Sequence record: OR228459.1
DNA length: 64,000 nt
Direction: 5' to 3' (one strand)
Part shown: piece by piece, positions 19,822 through 47,397 of the stretch
Layout: every line of letters starts with the position of its first letter
Position numbering within the stretch: the first letter of the stretch is position 1
Translations under genes and position numbers: made by a program
Notes under the pieces: model-generated
What the model was told of the DNA's origin: nothing
The model's input: the letters and a program-made list of their open reading frames with translations, nothing else
Databases searched by the model: none

Positions 19822-20307
19822 ATGTCTTTATCTAAAGATATTGAATTCGCGTATCAGGTTCTGCGTATTCGTAATGAAATGATTAGCGATGAAATCTGCA
19901 ATAAACTTCCGGTGGGATGGACGTTCGGGGCAAACTTTCAAATTAAATCTTATTTCTATAGATTTAAAAATTATCGTGGTCATAGACTTTTCGGGGATGT
20001 TAATTCTCTTCATTATAACATTGATTCACAAACTTCTTTCATAAGCAATATGTCATTTTTGTATATAGCCGATAGCAATGTTGTTTCGTTTGCATATAAA
20101 GAGAAAGATATTCCCATCGTGGAATTTACTGAAGAATTATACTTTCAATATAGTTTGTTGTACTCAGATAAAGAACTTCGCTGGTTAGTTGTTGCAAGCA
20201 TACTTTATAATAATCCAATTAAAAATTGTAAGCGTTTTAAGATTCGTTTAGATTATATTCAAATATTAACAAAACTTTTGAGGTATTCAGACTATGGCAT
20301 CATATGA
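19822..20307 (+). CDS. FQxS-motif paralog family protein
   Basis: TEELYFQYSLLY. Confidence 0.75.
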   Translation: MSLSKDIEFAYQVLRIRNEMISDEICNKLPVGWTFGANFQIKSYFYRFKNYRGHRLFGDVNSLHYNIDSQTSFISNMSFLYIADSNVVSFAYKEKDIPIVEFTEELYFQYSLLYSDKELRWLVVASILYNNPIKNCKRFKIRLDYIQILTKLLRYSDYGII

Positions 20308-20857
20308 TGATGATTTACAATATGCAAAAGATATACTTCGCATTCGTCAAGCACTTTATGACGGGACTCTTGTTTCTGGGGAATCATCAATTATTACTTC
20401 TTCCCAAACGGTGACGATGCACGATATAACTTACGAAATAGATACAATAACTCAACAAAAACTCGCGAACCATAATGGATTTAACTATTATATTCATCTT
20501 GCGAAACATAAAGAGGATCGTCATCGCCATGTTTTTGGACACATTCGCGAAGAAACAACAGATGCCGCAAGCGTTCTTACTTCTAAGTCTATACGGTTGA
20601 TTACTTCTAAACCACAGATGTTACTAGGTGATGTAATGAGTGCGTTGCTTGGAAAAGGTGTAGAGATGGACTTATCCGAAGATTACACGGAAGAAAGACA
20701 CTTTCAAGACAGCTTGTTGTACTCAATCGAACAAGTTAAAGGTATCGTGGTTGCTCATTACTTATACAAACACCCACTACCAGAATACAATTGCTTTAAG
20801 ATTTTCTTCCATCATATTCCAACTATCTTGAAGATACTTGACGAAAAGGAAAAATAA
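20294..20857 (+). CDS. FQxS-motif paralog family protein
   Basis: TEERHFQDSLLY. Confidence 0.75.
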   Translation: MASYDDDLQYAKDILRIRQALYDGTLVSGESSIITSSQTVTMHDITYEIDTITQQKLANHNGFNYYIHLAKHKEDRHRHVFGHIREETTDAASVLTSKSIRLITSKPQMLLGDVMSALLGKGVEMDLSEDYTEERHFQDSLLYSIEQVKGIVVAHYLYKHPLPEYNCFKIFFHHIPTILKILDEKEK

Positions 20858-20860
20858 TAA

Positions 20861-21394
20861 ATGAACGATTTCAAAAAACTTGCACATGATATTGTTGAAA
20901 CTGTGTTGTACTTACGTGAATGTCACAAAAATCGCGTTGTTAATTTTGTGACTATTGATTCCATGTGTTATCTCATTGAGCGGCAGATATCACCACATAG
21001 GCGTGGGATGGTATTTGCAGCAGATGATGGCATGGAAATCTATTTCGACTTCGAGCCAGCAGGTGAGATTGATTTACCATCTAAACCATATGAAGAACAA
21101 CATTCAAGTAGATTCTTTACTGAACATGGGTTCCTATATTATCACCCATCATTACCGTACTTTAATGCAGTTCCTTCACTAGAAGATGAAACTAAAAATT
21201 TAGTTGTTCCCTTGCCTTCACGGTTACTAAACGAAGATGAAATTTTTCAATATATGACAATACTCTCCCCAGATGAAATCTTTGCATTACAATTAACTAA
21301 CTATATGAAACACATTACCGCCCCCGCAGTTGGGATTACTTTTAGGAACCTAAATGAGAGTCGGAGAATGATGAACTTTAAAAAGGTATTATAA
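20861..21394 (+). CDS. FQxS-motif paralog family protein
   Basis: NEDEIFQYMTIL. Confidence 0.75.
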   Translation: MNDFKKLAHDIVETVLYLRECHKNRVVNFVTIDSMCYLIERQISPHRRGMVFAADDGMEIYFDFEPAGEIDLPSKPYEEQHSSRFFTEHGFLYYHPSLPYFNAVPSLEDETKNLVVPLPSRLLNEDEIFQYMTILSPDEIFALQLTNYMKHITAPAVGITFRNLNESRRMMNFKKVL

Positions 21395-21991
21395 ATGTTT
21401 GATATGAAAAATGAAACTAATATGGTTGAAGGATGTAAACAGATTGAACGCATCTTGAAATTCATGTTGACTTTCGATAATGCTGTATATAATCTAGAAT
21501 TTATCGGCACTGATGGTTCTGGTATGAAATATAAAATCAATGATGACTTTATTATTTGGAATAGTTTAAATGAAGTTAACATACTCTATAATGATAATAA
21601 AGATGATACATATGGTGGTGGATTTTGCTACAGTATTCGTTCATTTAAGAAAGATGATATCACATCAATGCGTTCATTTTACAATGACGATTATTATGTA
21701 GAATTCATATACTTCAATTCGGAATATAACGGAGAAATAGAAATTCAAATTGAAGGTAAGGATGAAATCGTGTTTTCATACCCAGAATACGATTTAGAAA
21801 CTGATGACGGAGCATTCCAATACTCCTGTTTGTACTCTAATGATATAGTGAACATCCAAACTATCAATCAATATTTCTATAAACGTAAAGCGAAACCTTT
21901 TAGTGTTTGGCTCTCATTACCTATCACTAAACTATATAGGATACTAGATGAACAATTTAACATTTCCAGAGAAGATAGTACTACTAATTGA
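21395..21991 (+). CDS. FQxS-motif paralog family protein
   Basis: TDDGAFQYSCLY. Confidence 0.75.
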   Translation: MFDMKNETNMVEGCKQIERILKFMLTFDNAVYNLEFIGTDGSGMKYKINDDFIIWNSLNEVNILYNDNKDDTYGGGFCYSIRSFKKDDITSMRSFYNDDYYVEFIYFNSEYNGEIEIQIEGKDEIVFSYPEYDLETDDGAFQYSCLYSNDIVNIQTINQYFYKRKAKPFSVWLSLPITKLYRILDEQFNISREDSTTN

Positions 21992-22469
21992 GTACTTCTA
22001 CAATGATCCAGAAAAATTAGCTCATTCTCTAGGGACTAAAGTATATTCACACTTAAATCAAGATCAAGATTCAGCATATGACCAGACTGAAAGGGAATTC
22101 TATGAGATATGCCAAAACGGTACTTACCTTCTTATAGCTGGAGAGTATAATAACGCATGGGTTAATGAAAGATACATTGATGATGGTAACTACCCATGTG
22201 ATTTAGTATTCTATGCACCAAACCCAGACAATGGTACTAGTAATATTCTATATATGACAAATCATAAATTGGGTCTTGTCCAAGAAGAGTTCGGTACTAA
22301 AAACATGGATATCTATACTGAAGAGAAGTTATTTCAGTACAGTACAATATACCCAGAGTTCGTTACAGAATCATTGGAATGGTGGAAGGTATTTGTAAAA
22401 TCTAAAATACCCTTCAGGATAAATTTAACGTTACTAGACATAGATAAATCCCTAGAGGTGTACTTATGA
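21948..22469 (+). CDS. FQxS-motif paralog family protein
   Basis: TEEKLFQYSTIY. Confidence 0.75.
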   Translation: MNNLTFPEKIVLLIEYFYNDPEKLAHSLGTKVYSHLNQDQDSAYDQTEREFYEICQNGTYLLIAGEYNNAWVNERYIDDGNYPCDLVFYAPNPDNGTSNILYMTNHKLGLVQEEFGTKNMDIYTEEKLFQYSTIYPEFVTESLEWWKVFVKSKIPFRINLTLLDIDKSLEVYL

Positions 22470-23005
22470 CGTATACTTACGAATATACAATGAACTATAC
22501 TGAATCTTTATTTGAATTAGCTGAGTACTTAATGATGCTATCTAAAAGATCAGGAATGATTAGTTTATCACAAGTGAGAAGAAAATCTACGGCAGTGTTG
22601 CATATAGAAAGAAATGTATTTGATTATGGTGATATTGAGACACGCTTTTGGTATCATGGTCAAGAGATACTAAATGATTTTACAATGGCTAAGTCTAATG
22701 AAAATTCTTTTACTGTATATTACTCACAAAATAACGTTTCGTATTGTAGTACATTAGTGGATGATACAATGGAATTCAGTGATGCTAACACAGTACAAGA
22801 TACTCGTATCAATATTCTCAGTACTGGAGAACTAACAGAAGAAATGTATGAACAATTACAATTTATTCATAAACCAGAACTTGTTCATTCATTATTTGTG
22901 ATATCTAAGATGCATAATGATTGTAAGATGCTTGCATACTCACAAAATGAAGAGAGTGGTTCTCCTTCTGAGATATTAGAAGCACTAAGGAAGATATATG
23001 ATTAA
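22466..23005 (+). CDS. FQxS-motif family protein (variant)
   Basis: TEEMYEQLQFIH. Confidence 0.65.
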   Translation: MTYTYEYTMNYTESLFELAEYLMMLSKRSGMISLSQVRRKSTAVLHIERNVFDYGDIETRFWYHGQEILNDFTMAKSNENSFTVYYSQNNVSYCSTLVDDTMEFSDANTVQDTRINILSTGELTEEMYEQLQFIHKPELVHSLFVISKMHNDCKMLAYSQNEESGSPSEILEALRKIYD

Positions 23006-23501
23006 AGAGAATGAGTTTGAAGAAGCGTATTCAGTACTGTTATCTATCTTTGAGATTACTGATAGAGTGCAGAAATGTAGATACAGACATAAGATGCCTA
23101 GATGTTTTGCATTTGAGAGTGCATGGAGTTTATTATATGTTACTTCTGGCAATGAAGAAAATAGAGTGAAGTTGCGTTCTTTGACTAACAAGTATTCATT
23201 TATTATGTATGAAGGACACCGCAAAGCAAATGTCTCTTTGAAATTCTGTTATGACAATGGAAATAGTATTCGTATTGGTCATGAGTACTTTGAGCTATCA
23301 GACTTCACAGAGGAAGCAATATTTCAGTACAGTACAATGTGGGATGCTGAAATGATAACCGATTTGTACTTTTACTTATTTTTGAAGTCAAAGGGTTTAA
23401 AGCAGAATTTTAGTTTAAGAGAGGGTGCATACAGTCTTTCAGGATTAAAAGAAATATTAGAACATATTCAAGAGTGTGAGGCTCATATAATTTATGATTG
23501 A
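22998..23501 (+). CDS. FQxS-motif paralog family protein
   Basis: TEEAIFQYSTMW. Confidence 0.75.
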   Translation: MIKENEFEEAYSVLLSIFEITDRVQKCRYRHKMPRCFAFESAWSLLYVTSGNEENRVKLRSLTNKYSFIMYEGHRKANVSLKFCYDNGNSIRIGHEYFELSDFTEEAIFQYSTMWDAEMITDLYFYLFLKSKGLKQNFSLREGAYSLSGLKEILEHIQECEAHIIYD

Positions 23502-24018
23502 AGAAAAACATTACGAATACGCAAGGTCATTGATTTGGATAGAGAAACTATTTCAAGAGTTACAAACGAAGATGCCCGGTAAATTCTTGAAGTACTCACC
23601 TTTGATGTTCTCATTAGAACTCGATAAGACGGATTGTATATGGTATAACGATACCCCTGTTATCGATTTTAAGGTTGCTTGGGGAGAAGATTCTTTTAAT
23701 ACAAATTATTTGTGGGCCGCTGAGAACGACAGTCGCGAGCGTAGTATAATTATTATTGCACCGAATACAAAGGTATACATGGCGAATGTCGATAGAAATA
23801 CAAATGGCACGGAGTACATTTTAGATTTCGATGATAGTGAATCCTTTGTATTTCAGATGCAGTTAGTACAGAAAAGTATGTGGGATGAATTTTGTATATT
23901 ATACGCATTGCATGAATTAGGATTTAGTCGTCCTGCATTTATACACGTTTGGAGTCAGCAAGTATTAGATATCATCATTAACAAAATGGAGGATATTATT
24001 AGATATGACGTTATCTGA
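23494..24018 (+). CDS. FQxS-motif paralog family protein
   Basis: SESFVFQMQLVQ. Confidence 0.7.
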   Translation: MIEEKHYEYARSLIWIEKLFQELQTKMPGKFLKYSPLMFSLELDKTDCIWYNDTPVIDFKVAWGEDSFNTNYLWAAENDSRERSIIIIAPNTKVYMANVDRNTNGTEYILDFDDSESFVFQMQLVQKSMWDEFCILYALHELGFSRPAFIHVWSQQVLDIIINKMEDIIRYDVI

Positions 24019-24565
24019 ACAATACGACAATCGTAGGGTATATGATTATTGTACTATGATGATGGAAATAATTTCGAATCTTATTACGTGCTCATTGATG
24101 GATACCGAAAAAATGAGGTTCACCCGTTACCCATCAGGTCGAGTATATTACAAGAATAAAATACGGAACGCAGAAAACAAGTTATTCAATTTTGGTACAG
24201 TTCTAGAAGGTTCGTATCCAGAATATAGAAGTCAAGTTTCGATGAGTAAAGACCCGGATAATCATTATTTTAAAATAGAATATTTTGATAATAATGTAAC
24301 GACCTTACCAGTACAAGTAGAGGTGGACGGAATATATCAAGATATACAAATGTACACACCAGAAGAATTAGTTAATGATGCTTATATGTTTCAGCAGTCA
24401 TTAGTGCTTGACGAACCGATGCTGTTTGGGTTATTATGTTTATCAATTTTGCGGTTCATTGGTGTACGTAATATGCACATTATATGTGAATTTACAGTAC
24501 AAGATATGACCGCAGTATATGAGGATTATTTAAATGCCAAACGAAAGTGTGTTAACATACAATGA
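24005..24565 (+). CDS. FQxS-motif paralog family protein
   Basis: NDAYMFQQSLVL. Confidence 0.75.
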   Translation: MTLSEQYDNRRVYDYCTMMMEIISNLITCSLMDTEKMRFTRYPSGRVYYKNKIRNAENKLFNFGTVLEGSYPEYRSQVSMSKDPDNHYFKIEYFDNNVTTLPVQVEVDGIYQDIQMYTPEELVNDAYMFQQSLVLDEPMLFGLLCLSILRFIGVRNMHIICEFTVQDMTAVYEDYLNAKRKCVNIQ

Positions 24566-25151
24566 GATACAAGAGTGTGCTGATTACATTGAAGAATCTT
24601 TGGGATTAATCAAAGACACCCATAATAAGATATTAGAAAGAAGTACAGAACCTATGGTATTACGAGTACCAGCATGGGATTTTGACAGTGAAGCCATTTT
24701 GAGTTTCAATTATGATACGATTGATAGTTGGCAAGGGGAGTATGGTAGATTTCACATTTCATTAGAGCAATTACAAAAAACTATTATTAGATTTAAATGG
24801 GATTTTAAACCTTTCCATACACATAATGTAGTAATAGTAACAAAGGATAATTTGAATACAAATATGTCTCTTAATACAATGCATAAAGATATCACATTCA
24901 AGCGTTGGCTTGGTGGTGATGTTTTTTGTACATATGAAATGCTTGATATAACGAAAGAAGAGACGGAAGGATTTTTATTCCAAGAGAGTTTAGTACAAGA
25001 ACCTATTATCATCAATACATTAATGTTCATGTACGAGTGGCACAGGCGTAAGGGTATTAATATGCAATTACGTTTCAGTACAGATCCGTTGAAGGAATGT
25101 AAGGGTATATTAAACATTGTTAAATTAGCGAGAGAGATGCATGGATATTAG
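24534..25151 (+). CDS. FQxS-motif paralog family protein
   Basis: TEGFLFQESLVQ. Confidence 0.75.
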   Translation: MPNESVLTYNEIQECADYIEESLGLIKDTHNKILERSTEPMVLRVPAWDFDSEAILSFNYDTIDSWQGEYGRFHISLEQLQKTIIRFKWDFKPFHTHNVVIVTKDNLNTNMSLNTMHKDITFKRWLGGDVFCTYEMLDITKEETEGFLFQESLVQEPIIINTLMFMYEWHRRKGINMQLRFSTDPLKECKGILNIVKLAREMHGY

Positions 25152-25803
25152 TACATTACATCGTTTAATACAGGCATACAAAGCATTGCCTAATATGGAT
25201 AAAGTAAATGTGGGTAATTTCATTAATGAGGGTGTACCGTATGGTATTCGCATCATTAAGCGTAGATTCAATTCCGAGTACAGTCAGGAGTTAGAATTTG
25301 GTGCAATACAGATTGAGATGCCATCATTGAGTGGTAAATTGTATGTACCTATTATGGATTTCAGGGTAAATCATCCGAGTAAATTCAAGAGTGTATCTCC
25401 TATATTGAACATTGACCCGCATTGGATTGGTATACAGTTCAGTCAGGAGTGCATAGAAGAGTTTGCTGATAATGTAATAGTGCTTGCTAACACGAGGTTC
25501 GAGGGTAAGTCGATTACATTTGAGTTGAGTGGTACAGAAGAAGAGTGTTTTGATACGTTAGAAAGTTCATTGTTCCAGCACAATGTATCCTGTCCAGAGA
25601 ATGAGGTATTAGATTCCGATATTGTATTGAGTCGTTTTAATTTAGGCAATCAGTACATTAAAAGTACATTAGGATTTGAGGGTGAATGTGTTAATAGTTT
25701 AGAGATAATGACGCCAACCTTGACAGTACGAAGAGGATATGATATGATTTTGCCTTACGATGAAATTGCAGAAGTCTTAGAGAATTTTGTGTCACAAAAT
25801 TGA
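25141..25803 (+). CDS. FQxS-motif paralog family protein
   Basis: LESSLFQHNVSC. Confidence 0.7.
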   Translation: MDISTLHRLIQAYKALPNMDKVNVGNFINEGVPYGIRIIKRRFNSEYSQELEFGAIQIEMPSLSGKLYVPIMDFRVNHPSKFKSVSPILNIDPHWIGIQFSQECIEEFADNVIVLANTRFEGKSITFELSGTEEECFDTLESSLFQHNVSCPENEVLDSDIVLSRFNLGNQYIKSTLGFEGECVNSLEIMTPTLTVRRGYDMILPYDEIAEVLENFVSQN

Positions 25804-25966: not shown

Positions 25967-26527
25967 TTGTCATTCAAAGATAGATTTAAAGATTTTTCCA
26001 GATTAGAACTTATTGAGTACTGCAAAAAGATTCTTGGTCTATCTAAGTTTCTTCAAGATAACTACACCGAATGTGTAGAGTACTTCGACATTGATACTAA
26101 TAATGGAGATCATGTTCGTATTCGAGATGTATATCATGGTGATGTATGGTTTTCCTTCTATTCTGATTATAGATATCGTTTAGTACAAAACACTTTAGTA
26201 CAGATGCAATTGACTGCTAATATTTCATCATCTTCAGTACTATATGATAGATCAGAAGCCCATCCTAGTGGGGAGACCGGTTTTGAGTTTTCGCGAATTA
26301 TGAATATAACAATACCTTGTTGGTCACATATTTGTACTGAAGAATTATTCTTTCAAGAATCGCTATTATTAGATACGTATACATTTAATATTAATTTTGT
26401 GTACTCATTTTTAAAAGAATTTGGTAATGGGGCATTTACTATTGAGTTGGATGAAGTTGAAGAGAAGCATGATATTTTAATGCAGCACAACAAATATAAG
26501 GATTTCTATGAATCTATCAGACTATAG
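25967..26527 (+). CDS. FQxS-motif paralog family protein
   Basis: TEELFFQESLLL; TTG start after GGAG. Confidence 0.7.
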   Translation: MSFKDRFKDFSRLELIEYCKKILGLSKFLQDNYTECVEYFDIDTNNGDHVRIRDVYHGDVWFSFYSDYRYRLVQNTLVQMQLTANISSSSVLYDRSEAHPSGETGFEFSRIMNITIPCWSHICTEELFFQESLLLDTYTFNINFVYSFLKEFGNGAFTIELDEVEEKHDILMQHNKYKDFYESIRL

Positions 26528-27116
26528 ATATGAAGACTGGATGAACATTAAGGCAGTGGCTTTAGTACTAAGAGACATTTCGGATCACTATGCCTATTCA
26601 GTCACTGGTTCAATTGATAAAGTACTATACGATAATGGTCACTTTAAGATTTCACTGTACACCAGTAGTATTGTTATTCAGAAAAATGTCGAGGATGTAT
26701 TAAGAGAAAGATCATTTATCCTAGGTGTTAATACTGAAGAAGGTGATGACAAACGTCCGTACAGTGCTCGCTTACACAAAGAATCAGATAGATTTACTGT
26801 TCGCAATTCGGACAGTAATAGTATTTTGCACGTTGATAATAATAACTGGTGGTTCCGTGATGTTCGCGGTGATGAAGTGTATCTTGATGTACTTGAAAGT
26901 ACTGATAAAGAATCTTTAGAGCTTGAAGTATTTCAGAAGAGTTTAATATATACTGAACCCGAAATGAATGCTATGATCATGAACTATCTATTACGTAACA
27001 CACTAATAAGTAATGAAAGTAGTAAAATATACCTAGGCTATACTAATACATTGCATCATATTTTAGATGCATATCAGTACTTAGAGGATATCCAAAAAAA
27101 ATGTTTGAAAGATTAG
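26508..27116 (+). CDS. FQxS-motif paralog family protein
   Basis: LELEVFQKSLIY. Confidence 0.75.
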   Translation: MNLSDYRYEDWMNIKAVALVLRDISDHYAYSVTGSIDKVLYDNGHFKISLYTSSIVIQKNVEDVLRERSFILGVNTEEGDDKRPYSARLHKESDRFTVRNSDSNSILHVDNNNWWFRDVRGDEVYLDVLESTDKESLELEVFQKSLIYTEPEMNAMIMNYLLRNTLISNESSKIYLGYTNTLHHILDAYQYLEDIQKKCLKD

Positions 27117-27640
27117 AGTACATTAAAAAGTTGATAGATATGATGATTTACATTCATAGTAATCACATACATCTTACCAGACCATTATCTAAAAATGTTA
27201 GCATATCATCGAAGCTAGATGATAATGCACTTGCGACAACAATTATTGATAAATTAGATCAGTGGTTTGTTATGGCCTGTCATGATTATGTTGGACAGCC
27301 TATAACAGAAAATACGATATTCTACTGTGATAATAGTTTTGGTAGTGGACACGTTCAGTGCACTATGCATTCATCATATATAGCAGATCAACGAGGTATT
27401 GCACACACAGAAAGTGAGATTACATTACCAGTACTTGATTTTCTTGAAGAATCATCATTATTTCAGTACAGTACAATGTACAATGATTATCATCTATTCT
27501 TTATGTGGGTTGAATGTGCATATCATGATGTACTTCCTAAGAACTTTTATATGTCATTGAACGCCACAAAGTTGCTTGGTATGAGTGTAGAGTACTTGAA
27601 GGAATCGGTAAACATCATTGAACAAGAGTTGAATTATTGA
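27101..27640 (+). CDS. FQxS-motif paralog family protein
   Basis: EESSLFQYSTMY. Confidence 0.75.
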   Translation: MFERLEYIKKLIDMMIYIHSNHIHLTRPLSKNVSISSKLDDNALATTIIDKLDQWFVMACHDYVGQPITENTIFYCDNSFGSGHVQCTMHSSYIADQRGIAHTESEITLPVLDFLEESSLFQYSTMYNDYHLFFMWVECAYHDVLPKNFYMSLNATKLLGMSVEYLKESVNIIEQELNY

Positions 27641-27696
27641 TTGACAAGGGCGGTGTATAATGTTACACTGCCCTTTCTTATTATTAGGAGGGTTCT

Positions 27697-28251
27697 ATGG
27701 ACAACCGAGTTTTTAATGAAATGAAGCGTTTCGCGGTGATGATTGATAATGAGTGGGATGAATTACAGTTCAGGAAAGAGACAGTCATAGATATTGGTAA
27801 TGATTATGTTCTGACGAAGTGTGTTCATTCTGATGTGGAAAAGATTATACTTCAAAAGAAACGTCCGTACACTGTTATTAATTTAAATGTTATAACATTT
27901 TGTCGTGCACCGATGTTTTTACCTAAAGAGCCGAACAGGTTAGATCGTGGTGAGTTTATATCACTTACAAGTGATTCACCAATATGTGAAATGTTTTTAT
28001 CGGACTCGGTAAGTATTCCATACGACAGAACATGTTCCGTAGATGAGCGTAAAATGTCGGTGGACTTAACGGTTGATGATGATATCATGCGTCAATTCAT
28101 GCATGTGGTCATTGACTATCAGGAACATAATTTCAAGAATCTCACGCACTGCGTTTATAAATTTGATTATTCAGTTGACTTTGCATCAGGTTGCGTGTAT
28201 GATATTATTACATCCAGACCATTATTCAGAAAATATGGAGTACTGAAATGA
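27697..28251 (+). CDS. Hypothetical protein (no clear FQ motif)
   Basis: AGGAGG RBS, own promoter. Confidence 0.75.
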   Translation: MDNRVFNEMKRFAVMIDNEWDELQFRKETVIDIGNDYVLTKCVHSDVEKIILQKKRPYTVINLNVITFCRAPMFLPKEPNRLDRGEFISLTSDSPICEMFLSDSVSIPYDRTCSVDERKMSVDLTVDDDIMRQFMHVVIDYQEHNFKNLTHCVYKFDYSVDFASGCVYDIITSRPLFRKYGVLK

Positions 28252-28895
28252 ATCACAACACACTTTTCAAACACTATCGTATCCTCAAGCACTTAGTAGA
28301 ATGTAGTAAAAAGCTAGATCAATCTGCTGGTAATCCTGAAATCAAATTCAAGATGATGTGGGAACTAGGTGAATTTGATGAAAAGGTTATTCGGTTACAT
28401 TACGCTAAAGATAATGCATCAATCCAAATGGCAATAATCGATCCGATTAAGCATGATATAAAAAGAATTGTTAAAATTCGCATGGCCCACAACAACCATT
28501 ACTATGATAAGAAGAATTATCTTTCGTACAATGGTAATGGTTTTACAATTAACGGTTCGGACAAAATTCGTTATACTGAATTGAATGCACATGAACACAT
28601 TTTACTTGATCCCCTACCACTAGAGACTGCTGGTTCATTAGTACTTCGCGATTCGTTAGAAGAGATTGATTTCCAGTACAACACACTATACAACTTCACT
28701 GGTAATGCATTTCAGATGTACTGTATCTTTAGTATGTTGTTCCATATTGATAATATTACGAAACCTTTTTACATGAATTCTGGAGAAGAAGCATTGATGA
28801 ATGTAGAATTATCAATGAATATTCCAGAAAATATTATTGATGACCTTGCAGTACGTGTTGAAGAATTCCATAAGAAACTACATGAGGATTTGTAA
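28248..28895 (+). CDS. FQxS-motif paralog family protein
   Basis: LEEIDFQYNTLY. Confidence 0.75.
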   Translation: MNHNTLFKHYRILKHLVECSKKLDQSAGNPEIKFKMMWELGEFDEKVIRLHYAKDNASIQMAIIDPIKHDIKRIVKIRMAHNNHYYDKKNYLSYNGNGFTINGSDKIRYTELNAHEHILLDPLPLETAGSLVLRDSLEEIDFQYNTLYNFTGNAFQMYCIFSMLFHIDNITKPFYMNSGEEALMNVELSMNIPENIIDDLAVRVEEFHKKLHEDL

Positions 28896-29401
28896 TGAAT
28901 AAGCACTTGCACGTAATCAAAGAATTAGAAAAGATAATGGATGCATGTCATTTTGAATCCAAAACCTTCAATAAGAGGTATCCTTCTGATTTTTGTATTA
29001 CAGTTGATTGCAGAGAAGAATACCCACGTGCAAGTATTTTTACTATGCCTAATATAGAAACAATCTATTACATTAGTAAAGTACCTACTAAGAATAGTCT
29101 TTGCTATTGTCATCCCAAAAAAGCATCGTGTTTATCTTTAAACAGTGTTGATGTATTACAAATCGGCAGTGATACTGTTATCGATTTGGAGCCTATCAAT
29201 TTACTTGAAGATAATTCAGATAAGCTATTCCAGATGAGTACTTTATTCCCTAACTTCATAGTTGAGTCATGGGCGGTTATTTCTCATTTACGTTTCGGTG
29301 ATTCAGACATTGAAGGTTTAGTCATTAGTGATATTAGTGATGAACATTATAATAATGTACTAGAACTTCTAGAACAAGCAAAAGGTGATATACATGAGTG
29401 A
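28895..29401 (+). CDS. FQxS-motif paralog family protein
   Basis: NSDKLFQMSTLF. Confidence 0.75.
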   Translation: MNKHLHVIKELEKIMDACHFESKTFNKRYPSDFCITVDCREEYPRASIFTMPNIETIYYISKVPTKNSLCYCHPKKASCLSLNSVDVLQIGSDTVIDLEPINLLEDNSDKLFQMSTLFPNFIVESWAVISHLRFGDSDIEGLVISDISDEHYNNVLELLEQAKGDIHE

Positions 29402-29930
29402 AATCAATCCAGTATTTGAATTGGTTTGTAAAATTAAAACAATTCGCGATTATCAACGTTGTGCTACACACTATAAGTACTTTCCAAAATTTGAAAAAGG
29501 TGACTTTGCAATTCATGCATTTGAACTCGATGCTCTTGAGATAAAACAGATAAGTGCTAACTTCCCAATCATGTGTATAAATGATATCAATACAGTACTT
29601 GAATACGAAAACAACCATCGTGATCAAAATAATGAACACAGATATACTTTCTTTTGGCGGAGGTCAAGTGGGGATGATATCGAAAGGGCTGATACTTCTA
29701 AATTTTCATTACCTTTGTTTGATGGTACTAACTATGACGAAGTAGAATTCAATGCTGATATGCTTGTAGTTAATTCATTACCTGTAGTACTTTGCACTCT
29801 ATTAAAAGAGTACAGTAAGGAAACTAATACCATATATTTGGGTCGTTTTACGTATGATGATGTACCTACAATTAATAATCTATTAGATGAGGCAATAGAA
29901 TGGATCAACAAAAGTACACAAGCATCTTAA
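29385..29930 (+). CDS. FQxS-motif family protein (variant)
   Basis: YDEVEFNADMLV. Confidence 0.6.
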   Translation: MIYMSEINPVFELVCKIKTIRDYQRCATHYKYFPKFEKGDFAIHAFELDALEIKQISANFPIMCINDINTVLEYENNHRDQNNEHRYTFFWRRSSGDDIERADTSKFSLPLFDGTNYDEVEFNADMLVVNSLPVVLCTLLKEYSKETNTIYLGRFTYDDVPTINNLLDEAIEWINKSTQAS

Positions 29931-30493
29931 TGGCGTTATTACATTTATTGAAGAAACATGATGAAATGAACACTTATTTCGATTCTGAAATTTCTTTTAT
30001 GCACAATTCAGAATGTATTACAGTGCAATTAAATTGTGATGAATATGCTACTGCTATGTCAGTTAAATTCGATTCGAAAAATCTCATCCGAATTCGTCTT
30101 GTTAATTGGTGCAGATTACATAATAGTACTGAATCAGAGGCATTGGATGATTTTAGTAATATCAATATGTCTTCTAGAGAATCAAGCGATTCCAGTTCGT
30201 TAAATTGCATTACACTCAATCCAGAAAAGATTAAGTTGTACATTCAAGGTTTCAAGAATCATTTAGTAGATTATAATAATATAGAGAGTGAACATTTCCA
30301 GATTAGTACAATAGAAGATATTCCAGATTTGGAACAATATCAGTACATGAGAAAAATGTATGATTTTTATAGTTCTTTATTGCCACAATTTGTTGGTTTG
30401 AATATTCAGTACATTAAAGATGAAAAATATAATAATTGTGATTTTATAGATTTCATAACTAAGAAAATTTGGGGGTTGATTGCATTATCATGA
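29900..30493 (+). CDS. FQxS-motif paralog family protein
   Basis: IESEHFQISTIE. Confidence 0.75.
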   Translation: MDQQKYTSILMALLHLLKKHDEMNTYFDSEISFMHNSECITVQLNCDEYATAMSVKFDSKNLIRIRLVNWCRLHNSTESEALDDFSNINMSSRESSDSSSLNCITLNPEKIKLYIQGFKNHLVDYNNIESEHFQISTIEDIPDLEQYQYMRKMYDFYSSLLPQFVGLNIQYIKDEKYNNCDFIDFITKKIWGLIALS

Positions 30494-31134
30494 AAACGAT
30501 TTACGAAAAGGCAGAGAAGTTTTGTGGATATCTTAAAGATATTGTGTACATGATGCGTTTCTATCAGGATCATTATGTTAGATTGAATAATTATAAAAAT
30601 ACATATAACAATACAATGATTCTAGGAAATGCAAATGAAAAAATGCGGTCGTATTATTTTAACTTCATGCATGAAGAATTTGGTATCATGAATGCAATCA
30701 CGACAAATGATATGTACGATAGACTTATCACGATAACCAACTCTAAAAGTCATATAGATAATAATATTAAAGGTGATAGACCGAAATATAATTTTGTTAT
30801 GTACTACTATGACAAGGTTGAGGATGACATGTGGCCTTTATTTGACATGTTGACTAACGGTATTGAATCTGATACAATCAAAGAAACTGAATTTCAAGCA
30901 CTGATGTTACATAATGAAGATACTTTACAAAAATACTATATTGCTATTATCATGATGGAGACATTAGGTTTATTCAGTGATCTTGATATGCCAGTACCAA
31001 TATTGGCATTGGGTAGTACTGATATACTGCGGTTCATCCCTGCAAGAAAAGCAATGATTGATATGATGACAAAGAAGGTTGGAGATGATTGGAAAACAAA
31101 ACTTGAAAAGCGTTATGGACATGTTATTAAATGA
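30469..31134 (+). CDS. FQxS-motif paralog family protein
   Basis: IKETEFQALMLH. Confidence 0.7.
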   Translation: MGVDCIIMKTIYEKAEKFCGYLKDIVYMMRFYQDHYVRLNNYKNTYNNTMILGNANEKMRSYYFNFMHEEFGIMNAITTNDMYDRLITITNSKSHIDNNIKGDRPKYNFVMYYYDKVEDDMWPLFDMLTNGIESDTIKETEFQALMLHNEDTLQKYYIAIIMMETLGLFSDLDMPVPILALGSTDILRFIPARKAMIDMMTKKVGDDWKTKLEKRYGHVIK

Positions 31135-31672
31135 TGAAGTTTACTTTTCATTATTCAATCTAATTGAGCGTTACAGGAACTTTCAAAGTACTTGTACACC
31201 TGATTTGTTACGTAATATGTCTGAGAGACTTGAAAATATTACAGCAGATTATTGGAAAGAATATTTTGGTATTTCATTCAGAAGTCATTCACATAGTTCG
31301 ATGGATAATATACTTACACTAAGTGAGTATGTTTCTACACATACCACAAATTTCATTTCAGTAAATGGTCTTGTTGTTCATGGGAATATTATTGGTACAG
31401 AAATTTGTCCATTAAAAGATACCAATCTTGATGAAATAGAATATGACTTCTATTTTTATTTGAATAACTGTAGTCTTTCTAGTAATAATGATGCTGAACT
31501 ATTCCAACAAAGTACACTGTATAATGTTTATAGCCCTTCTGAACTTCAGGAAATGGTTATTCGTTTAACCAACTTACCACTTCATCAAAATGAACGATTG
31601 ACACTGGAACCCGAAGTGTGTTATTATCAGTGCTATAAATTTTTTGACGAATTACTACGGGGATATTCATGA
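31079..31672 (+). CDS. FQxS-motif paralog family protein
   Basis: NDAELFQQSTLY. Confidence 0.75.
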   Translation: MEMIGKQNLKSVMDMLLNDEVYFSLFNLIERYRNFQSTCTPDLLRNMSERLENITADYWKEYFGISFRSHSHSSMDNILTLSEYVSTHTTNFISVNGLVVHGNIIGTEICPLKDTNLDEIEYDFYFYLNNCSLSSNNDAELFQQSTLYNVYSPSELQEMVIRLTNLPLHQNERLTLEPEVCYYQCYKFFDELLRGYS

Positions 31673-43330: not shown

Positions 43331-43376
43331 GTCCACTATAATGTGGACTTTCTTTTTAATCAAATAAAGGTGTTCT

Positions 43377-44003
43377 ATGACGAGAGAAGAAGCAGCACTG
43401 ATAAACTTTATGAATATGATCAACTCCATTGCGTTTATGGCTGAAGCATACAAGAATGATGATGATTTGAGTTCTTTAGATTTCAAGTTGAGGCGTTACC
43501 CTCTTAATTTAATGAATACAAGTGGTGGTTATTCTTTAAAGACAACTCATTTTCTAGATGATGAAGATGATAAACCATCACACGAAAACTTCTATGTTTA
43601 TAGTGATATGCCTCGCATCGGATCATACATGTATCCGAAAACAGAACATCTAGCTAGTATTAATACTTATAATATAACACTACAAAATGGTAAACCAGAA
43701 AATATCATTAGTATTGGATTTTGGGAACCTAATAATTGGATTATTCGCATAGAACATTGTAGTACTGAATTCATTATCAAAAATGAACGTGGTCAAAGTG
43801 AAATAATTGATATTACTGATGAAGCACAACTATTTCAGTACTCTCTAATGAATCCAACCTATCCAGATTTTCTAACGAAGATTGCATATGAGGGAATTGG
43901 ACTCATACTGCTTAGTGAGAAATATAATAAAATAATTATGAAAAGTTCTGGGTGTATTGTAGATTTGGGAATTAAAGATTTTACAAACGAGTTTAAGGAG
44001 TAG
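43377..44003 (+). CDS. FQxS-motif paralog family protein
   Basis: DEAQLFQYSLMN. Confidence 0.75.
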   Translation: MTREEAALINFMNMINSIAFMAEAYKNDDDLSSLDFKLRRYPLNLMNTSGGYSLKTTHFLDDEDDKPSHENFYVYSDMPRIGSYMYPKTEHLASINTYNITLQNGKPENIISIGFWEPNNWIIRIEHCSTEFIIKNERGQSEIIDITDEAQLFQYSLMNPTYPDFLTKIAYEGIGLILLSEKYNKIIMKSSGCIVDLGIKDFTNEFKE

Positions 44004-44035
44004 TAAAGCAGATTTATTCGCAAGGAGTGTGAGCG

Positions 44036-44767: not shown

Positions 44768-44818
44768 TTATATGTACACGGTAAATGCCGTGTACTCTTT
44801 TTAATATAAGGGTATCCT

Positions 44819-45118: not shown

Positions 45119-45124
45119 GTTGAT

Positions 45125-45649
45125 ATGCATTATCTTGATAACATTAGAACCTTGATTAACTTTTATAAAGTACTGAGGGGTATACAACAACATGAACCAT
45201 TTAATGTAAAACATTATGGTATTGAATGGAAATGGGATGGATCGTATGAATTAGAAATAAACAATTCAGGATTTATGTCTACAATTCATCTTCTTGAACC
45301 ATATAAAAGTAGTACATCAAACACGATATCAGTACTGACTCGTCGTTTGTATATTTGTAAGAATAGTAAAAACTTCATGACTGCTATGGGTGGTAATCCT
45401 TCAGTACCGACGCATGAACTCACTACCGAAGAAATGCATTTTCAACATAGTTTAATGTGTGAGTTGCCTGAACTGGAAGAGATTCAACAAGTTTATCAAG
45501 GTGCACTAGAATTAGTTGAGAATGGTATATTCTACCGAGGCTCGTATAATGGGAAGAAATTAAATCCAATTCCTGTTATTAAAAAGATGTTACTTGAAAT
45601 TGATAATAAGAAAATTGAATCTCACTGGAGACAATATTATGAATTTTGA
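45125..45649 (+). CDS. FQxS-motif paralog family protein
   Basis: TEEMHFQHSLMC. Confidence 0.75.
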   Translation: MHYLDNIRTLINFYKVLRGIQQHEPFNVKHYGIEWKWDGSYELEINNSGFMSTIHLLEPYKSSTSNTISVLTRRLYICKNSKNFMTAMGGNPSVPTHELTTEEMHFQHSLMCELPELEEIQQVYQGALELVENGIFYRGSYNGKKLNPIPVIKKMLLEIDNKKIESHWRQYYEF

Positions 45650-46223
45650 GTTATTCTTCAACGATGTGAAAGAGGCATTTGATGCATTAGATCATTACCG
45701 TAATATTGAAAAACAACTTCACCGGATGTGTATTGATGAAAATGGTATACGTCATAGTCATTCACTTGAGTACGATTGGAGTACAAAAGAACCTTATTAT
45801 GAAGGTTACCAATATTCAGCATTTATTGATTCATCTGATGCAAGTATTCAACATGTATACAACTACAGAATAAGAACAGTAAATCAAGAAAATTTACCAC
45901 ATTCTCAAATATATGTTAGTCCTTCAGGAAAAATCTATTCGTATAGATTTATTCCACAGAATATGGATGACTTTATAATTCGTTTTAAAATACAAGCTGG
46001 TATACCCGCTGAAGAATATAAAATATCAGAAGTACTAAAAGAAGAAGTATATTTTATGTTAAGTACTATAATGGATATACCAAGTATTGAAGATTTTAAA
46101 AATTTGTATATTTTTTCACAAAAAGTTCGCCCATTACTTATGCGTGATAAGATGGTGATGGAAGGTAGTTTTCCATCAATATTCATACAAAATCATTGCA
46201 AAGCTGTCTTAGGTGGTGTATAA
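45639..46223 (+). CDS. FQxS-motif family protein (variant)
   Basis: KEEVYFMLSTIM. Confidence 0.7.
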   Translation: MNFELFFNDVKEAFDALDHYRNIEKQLHRMCIDENGIRHSHSLEYDWSTKEPYYEGYQYSAFIDSSDASIQHVYNYRIRTVNQENLPHSQIYVSPSGKIYSYRFIPQNMDDFIIRFKIQAGIPAEEYKISEVLKEEVYFMLSTIMDIPSIEDFKNLYIFSQKVRPLLMRDKMVMEGSFPSIFIQNHCKAVLGGV

Positions 46224-46762
46224 TGACTCTTCTAGAAATTATAGAATGCATGGAATCATTGTATATTCGTAATCAATCTGAACCAGATTATTTTGATTAT
46301 GAAAATGAAAGATTCCGAGTATTCACAACGACTTATAAAGTAGGTGTATTTGATAAGAAATGTATGGATGAAATCATTACAATTTTCGATACTTGTAGGT
46401 CATCCATCAAAGAATCTTTTCCTTATATGAATACTTTTGATGGATGTGCATCTCCAAGATTTTCTATTTCATCATCATTTGAAAGCGATTCATTAGTACT
46501 TGATAGATTTGTCAAAGTATCAAACAAACACTTTTATGAAAGTGCTGGTGATGTTACTATTTTGAAACTTAAAGAACTTAGTGATGAATATGTATTCCAA
46601 TTGAGTACTATGTATAATTTGGGGGATATTGAAAACTTCAAGAAACTACCTAAAATACTTCCAGTACTTGGAACATATTGTGATGTGAAGCAACGAAGAT
46701 TGTTTATTATGAATCGTTATGATTTTGATAATATGCCATTTACCGAGGACATGTTTAAATGA
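46223..46762 (+). CDS. FQxS-motif paralog family protein
   Basis: SDEYVFQLSTMY. Confidence 0.75.
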   Translation: MTLLEIIECMESLYIRNQSEPDYFDYENERFRVFTTTYKVGVFDKKCMDEIITIFDTCRSSIKESFPYMNTFDGCASPRFSISSSFESDSLVLDRFVKVSNKHFYESAGDVTILKLKELSDEYVFQLSTMYNLGDIENFKKLPKILPVLGTYCDVKQRRLFIMNRYDFDNMPFTEDMFK

Positions 46763-47397
46763 AAAATATACAACCTTTATTATTCTTTTTTGAATTAGTT
46801 AATCAGTGGCGGTTCAATTATGCAGTGGATGTATTCAACTTAAAGCCAACTACAAAGTACTCAAAAATGTTTGGAGAAATCTATGTTGGACTTTCTCATC
46901 CACAAAGTCAATTTGAAATGTACTACACTAGTAAGAAGAGAACTGGTGCTATTGGTTTGTTAGTTGAAGATAAAAGTATAGGACAACCTGTGCTCTTTGG
47001 TGATCTTCAAGCATTTGGGTATAGAACGGTAATGCATCATGATTGGATGTACTTACCAATGGGAACAAATAAAATTGTTTATGCTAATGCTGAAGATATT
47101 GAAGTAAATCCAGATATTATGGAAGATGAACATTTTCAGCTAATGATGTTACATACATTACCTGAGTTTGAACACATTAAACCTGCAATTGAAGTACACG
47201 ATTATTTGAAACCAATTGTCCAGAAGCATGATATTGGTTTTGATATTTCATATGAACACTTGAAAACTGATTTTAGCGGTTTTGTTCCGAGTGCTCATGC
47301 ACTAGATACCATTGATTCTATATATGCAAATGCATTAGAACTATATTACGAGGCAGAAGAACATGGCAACCCATTCAGTAATTACATTGTATCATAA
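46759..47397 (+). CDS. FQxS-motif paralog family protein
   Basis: EDEHFQLMMLH. Confidence 0.75.
   Translation: MKNIQPLLFFFELVNQWRFNYAVDVFNLKPTTKYSKMFGEIYVGLSHPQSQFEMYYTSKKRTGAIGLLVEDKSIGQPVLFGDLQAFGYRTVMHHDWMYLPMGTNKIVYANAEDIEVNPDIMEDEHFQLMMLHTLPEFEHIKPAIEVHDYLKPIVQKHDIGFDISYEHLKTDFSGFVPSAHALDTIDSIYANALELYYEAEEHGNPFSNYIVS

What the first reader, a model, noticed from the sequence alone, without database searches (positions are those of the whole stretch)
19822..47397. About 30 tandem, highly diverged paralogs sharing only a C-terminal acidic-FQxS motif
Seen: 26 ORFs of ~150-220 aa carry a literal [DE]-[DE]-x-x-F-Q-x-[STMQN]-hydrophobic motif roughly 30-80 aa from the C-terminus (e.g. EELYFQYSLLY, EEAIFQYSTMW, EDEYFQISLIR, DEYVFQLSTMY). 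Four more have variants. They fill 19.8-34.6 kb as translationally coupled runs and recur at 43.4-47.4 kb. Their N-terminal parts look unrelated by eye, and there are no DNA-level repeats. Inference: a modular effector library with a variable target-binding domain and a conserved docking motif for one common partner, analogous to F-box/adaptor families. Candidate partners are the phage ClpP at 59417 or a virion-loading factor. Diversified anti-defence or host-range functions are plausible.
Basis: partly seen in the sequence, partly recalled or inferred. Interest (0 to 1): 0.82.

Follow-up and report, generated by a model that had tools for sequence, protein, structure and literature searches.

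The report
Ancient early-gene paralog family of jumbo phages
The window's 27-28 tandem genes are one very diverged protein family, with an invariant Phe-Gln helix and no known fold or function, that fills the early region of Rak2-like jumbo phages and was previously noted only as a "tandem array" in phage 121Q.

Summary
The window is bases 1-64000 of Klebsiella jumbo phage fENko-Kae01. 27 genes, plus one degenerate copy, at 19.8-34.6 kb and 43.4-47.4 kb share a [TS]-E-E-x-x-F-Q-x-S-[LT]-[LIV]-Y block about 55 residues from the C-terminus, far above chance.

The N-terminal parts are not truly unrelated. Pairwise and profile-profile searches find nothing. However, leave-one-out profiles, a 78-sequence alignment and two AlphaFold models point to one full-length alpha/beta domain: an N-terminal helix with a second weak motif (E-Y-A-K-x-I), a variable beta region, the motif helix, then helix, strand, helix. 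The motif is an integral helix, not a separable tail.

The family occurs only in Rak2-like jumbo phages: 40 copies in 121Q, about 26-31 in EJP2 and a RaK2-like phage, 3-5 in CBB. There is no Pfam, PDB-sequence or PDB-fold match. Copies are old. They have collinear full-length orthologs at 22-38% identity and dN/dS of 0.13, like their neighbours. Both blocks begin about 30 nt after near-consensus sigma-70 promoters, just past the 19.7-kb terminal repeat. Only one member appeared in the published lysate proteome.

Best reading: an early, non-virion host-takeover or counter-defence family on one scaffold. The ClpP-docking and virion-loading ideas are unsupported.

The parts
1..19736 (+). Left direct terminal repeat (context). 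The array starts 86 nt after its end.
   Evidence: Annotated repeat_region in OR228459.1 and in the paper PMC11218385. Holds 23 near-consensus sigma-70 promoters.
19765..19793 (+). Sigma-70-type promoter TTGACA-17-TATACT with an extended -10 TG, 29 nt before the first member.
19822..20307 (+). Member 1 (ENKO_051, 161 aa), motif TEELYFQYSLLY. The member best conserved across genera.
   Evidence: HMM. 37-38% identical orthologs in EJP2 and L004. AlphaFold pLDDT 76.9, pTM 0.75.
20294..20857 (+). Member 2 (ENKO_052), TEERHFQDSLLY.
20861..21394 (+). Member 3 (ENKO_053), NEDEIFQYMTIL.
21395..21991 (+). Member 4 (ENKO_054), TDDGAFQYSCLY.
21948..22469 (+). Member 5 (ENKO_055), TEEKLFQYSTIY.
22466..23005 (+). 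Member 6 (ENKO_056), degenerate motif TEEMYEQLQFI (F replaced by E).
   Evidence: Found by a profile built without it (iteration 0). Block HMM E 9e-4.
22998..23501 (+). Member 7 (ENKO_057), TEEAIFQYSTMW.
23494..24018 (+). Member 8 (ENKO_058), SESFVFQMQLVQ.
24005..24565 (+). Member 9 (ENKO_059), NDAYMFQQSLVL.
24534..25151 (+). Member 10 (ENKO_060), TEGFLFQESLVQ.
25141..25803 (+). Member 11 (ENKO_061), LESSLFQHNVSC.
25720..25748 (+). Promoter-like site TTGACA-17-TATGAT (TG) in the 3' end of member 11. A weaker site lies at 25875-25903 in the 163-nt gap before member 12.
25967..26527 (+). Member 12 (ENKO_062, TTG start), TEELFFQESLLL.
26508..27116 (+). Member 13 (ENKO_063, 202 aa), LELEVFQKSLIY.
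   Evidence: AlphaFold pLDDT 64.7, pTM 0.58, with the same element order as member 1.
27101..27640 (+). Member 14 (ENKO_064), EESSLFQYSTMY.
27641..27675 (+). Intergenic 12-bp hairpin with a T-rich tail (terminator-like), overlapping a TTGACA-17-TACACT (TG) promoter-like site.
28248..28895 (+). Member 15 (ENKO_066), LEEIDFQYNTLY.
28895..29401 (+). Member 16 (ENKO_067), NSDKLFQMSTLF.
29900..30493 (+). Member 17 (ENKO_069), IESEHFQISTIE.
30490..31134 (+). Member 18 (ENKO_070), degenerate motif KETEFQALMLH.
   Evidence: Found by a profile built without it. Block HMM E 1e-5.
31085..31672 (+). Member 19 (ENKO_071), NDAELFQQSTLY.
   Evidence: Ortholog in EJP2.
32045..32677 (+). Member 20 (ENKO_073), QEDEYFQISLIR.
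32668..33249 (+). Member 21 (ENKO_074), SEDDHFQLSLLH.
33700..34143 (+). Member 22 (ENKO_076, 147 aa, short C-terminal part), NEFDFFQYTLLN.
   Evidence: Full-length HMM. Weak with the block HMM.
34144..34629 (+). Member 23 (ENKO_077), GGELFQFSTVH. The only member detected by LC-MS/MS.
   Evidence: 12 spectra in Table S3 of PMC11218385.
35275..35301 (+). Palindromic hairpin, terminator-like, closing the first transcription block.
   Evidence: A terminator is annotated at the matching place in phage Munch.
43314..43342 (+). Perfect-consensus sigma-70 promoter TTGACA-17-TATAAT, 35 nt before the first gene of the second block.
43377..44003 (+). Member 24 (ENKO_095), DEAQLFQYSLMN.
45125..45649 (+). 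Member 25 (ENKO_098), TEEMHFQHSLMC.
45639..46223 (+). Probable degenerate member (ENKO_099), KEEVYFMLSTIM (Q replaced by M).
   Evidence: Motif seen in alignment A1. Not significant by HMM.
46223..46762 (+). Member 26 (ENKO_100), SDEYVFQLSTMY.
46759..47397 (+). Member 27 (ENKO_101), MEDEHFQLMMLH. Lies directly upstream of the RNA ligase gene, as does its counterpart in 121Q.
31669..32073 (+). Interspersed non-member (ENKO_072, 134 aa). Much better conserved than the family: 50-53% identity to EJP2 and RCIP0023.
33267..33731 (+). Interspersed non-member (ENKO_075), 36-39% identity to EJP2 and RCIP0023.
34676..35149 (+). Non-member at the array end (ENKO_078), 56% identity to RCIP0023.

Best explanation
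The genes encode one ancient multigene family of soluble, mildly acidic, non-virion proteins.

Fold. Each member is a single alpha/beta domain of 150-220 residues, specific to Rak2-like jumbo myoviruses. The order of elements is:
- an N-terminal helix;
- a beta region of variable length;
- a short helix carrying T-E-E-x-x-F-Q-x-S;
- a turn ([LT]-[LIV]-Y-[DSN]);
- a second helix, a strand and a C-terminal helix.
The Phe-Gln helix and its neighbours form the invariant centre of the scaffold and probably a shared functional site. The beta region and loops differ between paralogs and give each copy its own specificity.

Expression. The genes are transcribed by host sigma-70 RNA polymerase, in a few long, translationally coupled operons. 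These start immediately inside the left terminal repeat, so they are expressed early.

Proposed function. The family acts as a battery of host-takeover or counter-defence binders, with each paralog aimed at a different host or phage component.

Shown: the family, the motif, the whole-length relatedness, its age and collinearity, purifying selection, the promoters, the absence from the proteome, and the restriction to this clade.
Inferred: early timing, a binding (rather than catalytic) mode, and the targets.
For: Motif and family:
- Motif enrichment: 25 of 35 array ORFs against 1 of 87 other ORFs, with shuffles giving at most 3.
- A window-only HMM finds 36 members in 121Q, 18-23 in EJP2 and RCIP0023, and 13-19 in three IMG/VR jumbo contigs.
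- Only 54 hits at E<1e-3 among 1.84 billion representative proteins, one of them a spurious repeat protein.

One fold over the full length:
- AlphaFold models of two distant members give the same order of elements. The motif helix has pLDDT about 97, and pTM is 0.75 and 0.58.
- Leave-one-out signal in the first 40 residues (p=3e-5) and in the middle part (p=1e-4).
- Conserved columns run over the whole length.

Age and selection:
- Collinear full-length orthologs at 22-38% identity.
- dN/dS of 0.13, equal to the neighbours.
- Synonymous codon variation at the motif.

Early expression:
- 34 near-consensus sigma-70 promoters on the coding strand, against 7 on the other strand and 2.5 expected.
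- Two of them sit 29 and 35 nt before the first gene of each block.
- The CBB paper places RpoD-like promoters in the region of short hypothetical genes that it takes to be the early, host-takeover region; three more lie on the terminal repeat (PMC5259590).

Not a virion protein: 1 of 27 members detected in the lysate proteome.

Physical properties: median pI 5.0 and negative mean hydropathy (GRAVY), as for soluble proteins.
Against: - There is no expression, interaction or phenotype data for any member in any phage.
- The models were built from alignments of the paralogs themselves, which may impose a common structure. The second model has only moderate confidence.
- Invariant polar residues are not explained by a purely structural role and could mark catalysis or a common partner.
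- Absence from the proteome could simply mean low expression.
Confidence: 0.5

Rival explanations
1. Adaptor library. The conserved helix-turn-helix block docks every paralog onto one common machine: the phage ClpP with a phage or host AAA+ unfoldase, or another host hub. The variable part recruits different host proteins to it.
For: - The invariant exposed-type residues (E, E, Q, S) sit in an otherwise hypervariable family.
- Each paralog is individually conserved.
- The phage ClpP is intact and present in every genus that has the family.
- A ClpA-like ATPase is listed in the phage proteome.
- Near-absence of members from the late lysate is compatible with turnover.
Against: - The motif is an internal, high-confidence helix of a single predicted domain, not a separable element.
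- Co-occurrence with ClpP is confounded by common descent. ClpP also occurs in PA5oct, Atu_ph07, Lak phages and phage G. No family member turned up from these in the fold or sequence searches, but their genomes were not scanned directly.
- ClpP lies 12 kb away in a different gene cluster.
- There is no resemblance to known ClpX, ClpA or ClpS recognition signals, and no Pfam F-box or other adaptor hit.
Confidence: 0.12
2. Enzyme or small-ligand binder. The invariant Glu-Glu, Gln and Ser, plus conserved tyrosines, form an active site or a pocket for a nucleotide-like ligand shared by all paralogs. Variable loops set substrate or context. Examples would be sponges or hydrolases for host signalling molecules.
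For: - Invariance of polar residues across more than 130 sequences from several genera.
- Conserved aromatic columns in the N-terminal helix and strands that could line a pocket.
- Small early phage proteins of this size often act this way (established knowledge of anti-CBASS and anti-Thoeris sponges).
Against: - No fold or sequence similarity to any enzyme or sponge in the PDB, Pfam or NCBIfam.
- 27-40 copies of one chemistry per genome is hard to rationalise.
- Several members have lost F, Q or S yet are maintained.
Confidence: 0.2
3. Virion-internal proteins: inner-body or ejected proteins, as in phiKZ or the T4 internal proteins. The motif would serve as a packaging or processing signal.
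For: - Phage 121Q shows a phiKZ-like inner-body bubbling pattern (PMC5646251).
- Inner-body proteins of phiKZ-like phages are paralogous (own knowledge).
- L/Y/F-[TS]-E at the start of the motif loosely resembles a T4-type prohead protease site (own knowledge).
Against: - Only CDS_077 of the 27 members was found among about 220 detected phage proteins. True structural proteins gave 30-170 spectra.
- The genes lie in the sigma-70 promoter region next to the terminal repeat, far from the structural genes.
Confidence: 0.03
4. Short linear motif read by a host machine. Either a beta-clamp-binding peptide (Q-x-S-L-[LIV]-Y against QL[SD]LF) or a Gln-specific protease site (E-x-x-Y-x-Q, as in the TEV protease site).
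For: Superficial pattern similarity. Some members read Q-L-S-L-L or E-E-L-Y-F-Q.
Against: - The position after Ser is Thr in 44% of members. The residue after Gln is variable, not Gly or Ser.
- The segment is predicted helical and embedded, whereas clamp peptides and cleavage sites are extended and exposed.
- The conserved block extends about 30 residues, more than a linear motif needs.
Confidence: 0.03
5. Functionally empty duplicates: filler DNA from tandem duplication that expanded the genome.
For: Hua et al. 2017 interpreted the 121Q array simply as evidence of genome growth by tandem duplication.
Against: - dN/dS of 0.13.
- Intact reading frames in every phage examined.
- Collinear orthologs kept across genera at 22-38% identity.
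- Invariant residues kept in more than 130 copies.
Confidence: 0.02

Closest known systems
[quoted passage not shown] 2017, mBio, PMC5646251)
   Same: It is the same family. A profile built only from the window's genes finds 36 members (40 with the block profile) at 160-201.5 kb of 121Q. These include a two-gene block directly upstream of the RNA ligase gene, as in the window.
   Different: The paper gives one sentence and reads the array only as evidence of duplication. It gives no motif, fold, distribution, selection or expression analysis. The copies are in fact very dissimilar, at 10-25% identity.
Early host-takeover gene clusters at phage genome ends (SPO1 host-takeover module, T5 pre-early genes, T4 early genes; own knowledge)
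   Same: Position next to or in the terminal repeat. Strong host-type promoters. Small proteins of unknown function made first.
   Different: Those clusters are sets of unrelated genes. Here 27-40 genes are one family with an invariant motif, arranged in long coupled operons.
Multigene families near the termini of large eukaryotic DNA viruses (ASFV MGF360/505; poxvirus ankyrin/PRANC F-box-like proteins; own knowledge, and PMC12474291 for the MGF360 role)
   Same: Tens of diverged paralogs clustered near genome ends in a very large viral genome, with roles in host range and immune evasion. PRANC proteins combine a variable part with a conserved C-terminal helical docking box.
   Different: No sequence or fold relation. 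Bacteria lack the SCF ubiquitin system. The phage proteins appear to be single domains. Function is unknown.
F-box, SOCS-box and similar adaptor families
   Same: A conserved helical element of 30-45 residues in otherwise divergent proteins.
   Different: No Pfam F-box hit. The element is central to the fold rather than a separate module. No partner has been identified.
Other lineage-specific expansions in jumbo phages, for example about 35 zinc-ribbon genes in Bacillus phage G (Iyer et al. 2021, PMC7824862)
   Same: Expansion of a small protein to about 30 or more copies in a jumbo phage.
   Different: A different fold and clade. The phage G family has a recognisable domain that suggests DNA binding. 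This one has none.
PHROGs phrog_12674 and phrog_9317 (unknown function)
   Same: 5 and 3 window members match them.
   Different: PHROGs splits the family over many small groups and gives no function. No single model covers the family.

Membership tests
Rak2-like-phage 'FQ-helix' family (defined here) | Match to the family profile, with the [TS]-E-E-x-x-F-Q-x-S-[LT]-[LIV]-Y block 50-65 residues from the C-terminus | tested here: met
   27 window genes have E<1e-3. Two of them were found by a profile that excluded them. The profile transfers to 121Q, EJP2, RCIP0023, CBB and IMG/VR contigs.
Rak2-like-phage 'FQ-helix' family (defined here) | Tandem position just inside the left terminal repeat, on the coding strand, upstream of the methyltransferase-to-RNA-ligase cluster | tested here: met
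   Window: repeat ends at 19736, first member at 19822. CBB: repeat ends at 22456, first member at 22520. 121Q and the window share the members next to the RNA ligase gene.
F-box adaptors | F-box domain (Pfam PF00646 and relatives) able to bind Skp1 | tested here: not met
   No Pfam family at E<=0.01 in any of 34 array proteins, apart from one chance PTS_IIA hit. No Skp1 exists in bacteria (own knowledge).
Clp protease adaptors or substrates | Physical binding to ClpP, ClpX, ClpA or ClpS through a defined signal | not testable with these tools
   Only co-occurrence with an intact phage ClpP could be shown, and it is confounded by phylogeny.
Beta-clamp-binding proteins | QL[SD]LF-type peptide in an exposed, extended segment | tested here: not met
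   The residue after Q is mostly Y, H or Q. The residue after S is T in 59 of 134. The segment is predicted helical with pLDDT about 97.
Substrates of Gln-specific (3C/NIa-type) proteases | E-x-x-Y-x-Q followed by Gly or Ser, accessible to a cognate protease | tested here: not met
   The position after Q is Y, L, H or Q, and rarely G. The site is embedded in a helix. No such protease is annotated in the record.
Virion internal or inner-body proteins | Abundant in virions | tested here: not met
   1 of 27 members detected, with 12 spectra, in Table S3 of PMC11218385.
ADP-ribosyltransferases of the T4 Alt/Mod type | Arg / Ser-Thr-Ser / Glu catalytic signature and the ART fold | tested here: not met
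   No invariant Arg or downstream catalytic Glu column. No Pfam or NCBIfam hit. No fold match.
Any solved protein fold | Foldseek match to a PDB chain | tested here: not met
   Best E-values were 3.7 and 0.45, with TM-scores of 0.2 or less, for the two models. BFVD matches are only uncharacterised proteins of RaK2, 121Q, GAP32, fHe-Yen9-03 and SP27.

The most novel reading that the evidence does not exclude
The family is a phage-encoded set of substrate adaptors. Each paralog uses its variable surface to seize a different host protein and uses the invariant Glu-Glu/Phe-Gln/Ser helix to hand it to one common machine. That machine would be the phage's own ClpP with an AAA+ partner, or a host hub. 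This would be a bacterial-virus counterpart of F-box/PRANC targeted degradation.
Probability: 0.08. Interest if true: 0.9.

Novelty: new member of a known kind. Interest (0 to 1): 0.5.

Why it matters
The family takes up about 5% of the genes of every phage in a widespread group of 340-380-kb enterobacterial jumbo phages, several of which are proposed for therapy. It has no known fold, domain or function. It is old, individually conserved and placed where host-takeover genes sit, so it is probably central to how these phages subdue their hosts.

The work here adds three things. It defines the family with a profile, an invariant motif and a predicted scaffold. It shows that the '30 similar genes' once noted in 121Q are this same clade-wide family. 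It also gives clean mutational handles (FQ to AA, or deletion of whole blocks), which turns some 30 'hypothetical proteins' per genome into one testable question.

Tried and rejected
Searches that found nothing:
- BLASTP all-against-all within the window finds only four weak pairs.
- Leave-one-out HMMs on the N-terminal and C-terminal parts alone give no individually significant scores.
- hhalign of N-terminal ortholog profiles gives nothing apart from the 051/052 pair.
- Pfam, NCBIfam and PDB sequence searches give nothing.
- Foldseek against the PDB with both models gives nothing.
- The word-indexed protein search with the family alignment returned only near-identical proteins.

- Model coordinates are not returned, so burial of the invariant residues could not be measured.

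Literature: searches for transcriptomes of Rak2-like phages found nothing usable.

Ideas dropped:
- A DNA-level element, because of synonymous codon variation.
- A diversifying arms-race library, because dN/dS is 0.13.
- Helix-turn-helix DNA binding, because the proteins are acidic and the turn has no Gly.
- An ADP-ribosyltransferase, a clamp-binding peptide, and a TEV-like or prohead-protease site (see the membership tests).

Full report
IDENTITY OF THE WINDOW. A megablast of 19759-34629 hits Klebsiella phage fENko-Kae01 (OR228459.1, 360,105 bp) at 100% identity with identical coordinates. It hits Salmonella phages 7t3, SE_PL, Munch and PHA46 at 98-99%. The record annotates a direct terminal repeat at 1-19736. 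Every gene in the finding is annotated as a hypothetical protein. The describing paper does not mention paralogs (PMC11218385).

THE OBSERVATION. On the + strand, 19.8-35.1 kb and 43.4-47.4 kb hold 35 tightly packed genes. Many have overlapping stop and start codons.
- A relaxed form of the motif is present in 25 of these 35 genes but in only 1 of 87 other window ORFs. 2000 residue shuffles gave a mean of 0.4 and never more than 3.
- An HMM seeded on the motif-bearing genes converges on 27 members, two of which it recruited itself. A profile of the 30-residue block alone separates 26 of them from everything else, with E from 4e-11 to 9e-4; the next hit has E 1.9.
- Gene 45639-46223 has the motif with Q replaced by M and is a probable 28th member.
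- Seven interspersed genes are not members by any test.
- Codons at the invariant positions vary synonymously, so the constraint is on the protein.

EXTENT OF THE SIMILARITY. Anchoring 134 family sequences from several phages on the Phe shows a conserved block from -7 to +21. It reads D/E-x-[TS]-E-E-x-x-F-Q-x-S-[LT]-[LIV]-Y-[DSN]-x3-L-x2-[LIM]-x-[LIV]-x2-Y-L-K. Outside it, three tests failed for individual pairs: BLAST, leave-one-out profiles of the N-terminal or C-terminal parts, and profile-profile comparison of N-terminal ortholog groups. Taken together, though, the parts are related.
- Leave-one-out profiles of the first 40 residues rank the omitted member at a median of 9 among 51 non-family controls. 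9 of 27 outrank all controls (p=3e-5). The middle part gives p=1e-4 and the last 45 residues p=0.02.
- A 78-sequence alignment shows conserved columns throughout. These include a second motif in the N-terminal helix ([LI]-E-Y-A-K-x-I-x-x-L, with Tyr in 41 of 77), aromatic and aliphatic positions in the strands, and heptad-like positions in the last two helices.

PREDICTED STRUCTURE.
- AlphaFold2 on ENKO_051 with the 78-sequence alignment gave pLDDT 76.9 and pTM 0.75. The elements are helix 3-21, a low-confidence stretch 32-66, four strands at 72-98, helix 104-111 (the motif, pLDDT about 97), helix 116-129, strand 138-142 and helix 143-157.
- ENKO_063, which has no BLAST similarity to ENKO_051, gave a weaker model (pLDDT 64.7, pTM 0.58). 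It has the same order of elements and more strands.
- Both models therefore suggest one domain in which the motif is an internal helix. The variable element is the beta region between the first and second helices.
- Foldseek found nothing in the PDB for either model. In BFVD it found only uncharacterised proteins of RaK2, 121Q, GAP32, fHe-Yen9-03 and SP27.

DISTRIBUTION.
- A profile search of 1.84 billion representative proteins returned 54 hits at E<1e-3. About half are the window's own proteins or near relatives. All but one spurious repeat protein carry the motif.
- The window-only HMM finds 18 members in the first 31 kb of Asteriusvirus EJP2, 23 in a RaK2-like Klebsiella phage, 36 in 121Q, 13-19 in three IMG/VR jumbo contigs and 3 in Mimasvirus CBB. 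The block profile raises these counts to 26, 31, 40 and so on.
- RaK2-like phages and 121Q also have short forms of 98-130 residues.
- In CBB the members start 64 nt after the terminal repeat, as in the window.
- In 121Q two members sit directly upstream of the RNA ligase gene, as ENKO_100 and ENKO_101 do here.

PRIOR KNOWLEDGE. Hua et al. [quoted passage not shown] A 2026 review repeats this. One search shows that the 121Q array is this family. The other papers I searched or read do not mention it: the RaK2, CBB and fEgEco12 papers and the Iyer et al. comparative survey. CBB reports only 22 paralogous ORFs in all.

AGE AND SELECTION.
- Eleven of the first fourteen window members have a full-length best hit, in the same order, in IMG/VR contig L004 (366 kb). 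Identity is 22-38%, with E from 1e-11 to 1e-33.
- By contrast, paralogs within the window hardly detect one another. The duplications therefore predate the split of these lineages, and each copy has been kept.
- Against phage Munch, the family has dS 0.056, dN 0.0072 and dN/dS 0.13. This equals the non-family genes of the same region (0.129) and the terminal-repeat genes (0.13).
- There is thus no sign of current diversifying selection, and none of decay.

EXPRESSION CONTEXT.
- Sites within one mismatch of TTGACA-N16-18-TATAAT number 34 on the + strand and 7 on the - strand. Composition-matched shuffles gave 2.5 +/- 1.6.
- 23 of the + strand sites lie in the terminal repeat, usually about 30 nt before a small ORF.
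- One lies 29 nt before ENKO_051, with a TG extension. A perfect-consensus site lies 35 nt before ENKO_095, the first gene of the second block.
- Weaker sites and a hairpin mark the two internal gaps. A hairpin at 35275-35301 closes the first region.
- The CBB paper likewise places RpoD-like promoters in its presumed early, host-takeover region of short hypothetical genes, with three more on the terminal repeat (PMC5259590).
- Early transcription by host polymerase is therefore a well-grounded inference, not a measurement.

PROTEOMICS. The published LC-MS/MS was done on an ultrafiltered, not gradient-purified, lysate. It detected about 220 phage proteins, including polymerase, ligases, RecA and ribonucleotide reductase. 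Of the family, only CDS_077 was seen, with 12 spectra. This argues against virion or inner-body proteins. It fits early, low-level or short-lived proteins.

THE ClpP IDEA. Gene 59417-60094 is a genuine ClpP, with E 1.6e-40 to solved ClpPs. The Ser, His and Asp of the catalytic triad are in place. It is 57-66% identical across all Rak2-like genera. It also occurs in more distant jumbo phages; no family member turned up from those in the fold or sequence searches, although their genomes were not scanned directly. It lies 12 kb downstream in a nucleic-acid-enzyme cluster. Nothing but shared ancestry links it to the family.

INTERPRETATION.
- The most economical reading is one ancient, clade-specific single-domain family, made early, not packaged, with paralog-specific surfaces. 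It would be a host-takeover or counter-defence battery.
- The invariant polar residues (Glu, Glu, Gln, Ser) imply something shared by all copies. That could be a buried polar network, a ligand pocket or a common partner. This is the main open point.
I give it about 0.1.
- The mechanism remains inferred, and no member of the family has been studied experimentally.

Noticed in passing
window 1-19736: The terminal repeat holds 23 near-consensus sigma-70 promoters on the + strand, mostly 28-54 nt before a small ORF. Strikingly often the distance is exactly 33 nt. So there is roughly one promoter for every two of its ~50 annotated genes, in contrast to the long operons of the array.
   Followed up: partly
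window 31669-32073: ENKO_072 (134 aa) sits inside the array and is not a member. It is far better conserved than the members, at 50-53% identity to EJP2 and RCIP0023. It has its own promoter-like site at 31598-31627. It starts M-I-L-Y-H-A-S, with only a chance-level DUF3990 hit (E 0.095). No PDB or NCBIfam match.
   Followed up: partly
window 34676-35149 and 33267-33731: ENKO_078 (56% identical to RCIP0023; weak JmjC_2 hit, E 0.022) and ENKO_075 (36-39%) are further conserved non-members at the end of the first block. Their positions are syntenic in EJP2 and RCIP0023.
   Followed up: no
window 19748-19793 and 27641-27675: In both places a 12-13-bp hairpin overlaps the -35 hexamer or the whole promoter-like site. 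This could be a combined terminator and promoter, or a regulatory structure.
   Followed up: no
window 19822-20307 (residues 104-111): The motif in ENKO_051 (E-E-L-Y-F-Q-Y-S) fits the E-x-x-Y-x-Q core of the TEV protease recognition site. This is almost certainly coincidence. It is still worth remembering if TEV-cleavable tags are used on these proteins.
   Followed up: no
window 38071-38934: This 287-aa ORF contains a literal D-D-x-x-F-Q-x-M match at residue 72. It is not a family member by either profile. It is the single chance hit outside the array.
   Followed up: yes
window 40162-60094: The gene order is methyltransferase, nucleotidyltransferase, HD-domain protein (42368-42979, Pfam HD E 7.9e-5), RNA ligase, kinase, phosphatase, DNA ligase, phosphoesterase, ClpP. 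The order is conserved in CBB, and in 121Q as far as that stretch was fetched (methyltransferase to phosphatase). The second family block is inserted between the HD protein and the RNA ligase.
   Followed up: partly
outside the window (CDS_264 of OR228459.1): The proteome table lists a 756-aa 'ClpA' ATPase encoded among tail and baseplate genes, with 17 spectra. The phage may therefore carry both halves of a Clp-type protease.
   Followed up: no
L003, L005 and L009 (RaK2-like phages and 121Q): These carry short family members of 98-130 residues in which the motif lies only about 50-70 residues from the N-terminus. They lack most of the beta region, which suggests a minimal core of the fold.
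   Followed up: partly
protein P0037 (public library): This 787-aa protein with 11 F-Q matches, most of them in F-T-S-S-T-x-F-Q-S-S-G-M-C repeats, matched the family profile at E 4.5e-5 in six stretches. It looks like a low-complexity false positive, not a relative.
   Followed up: no
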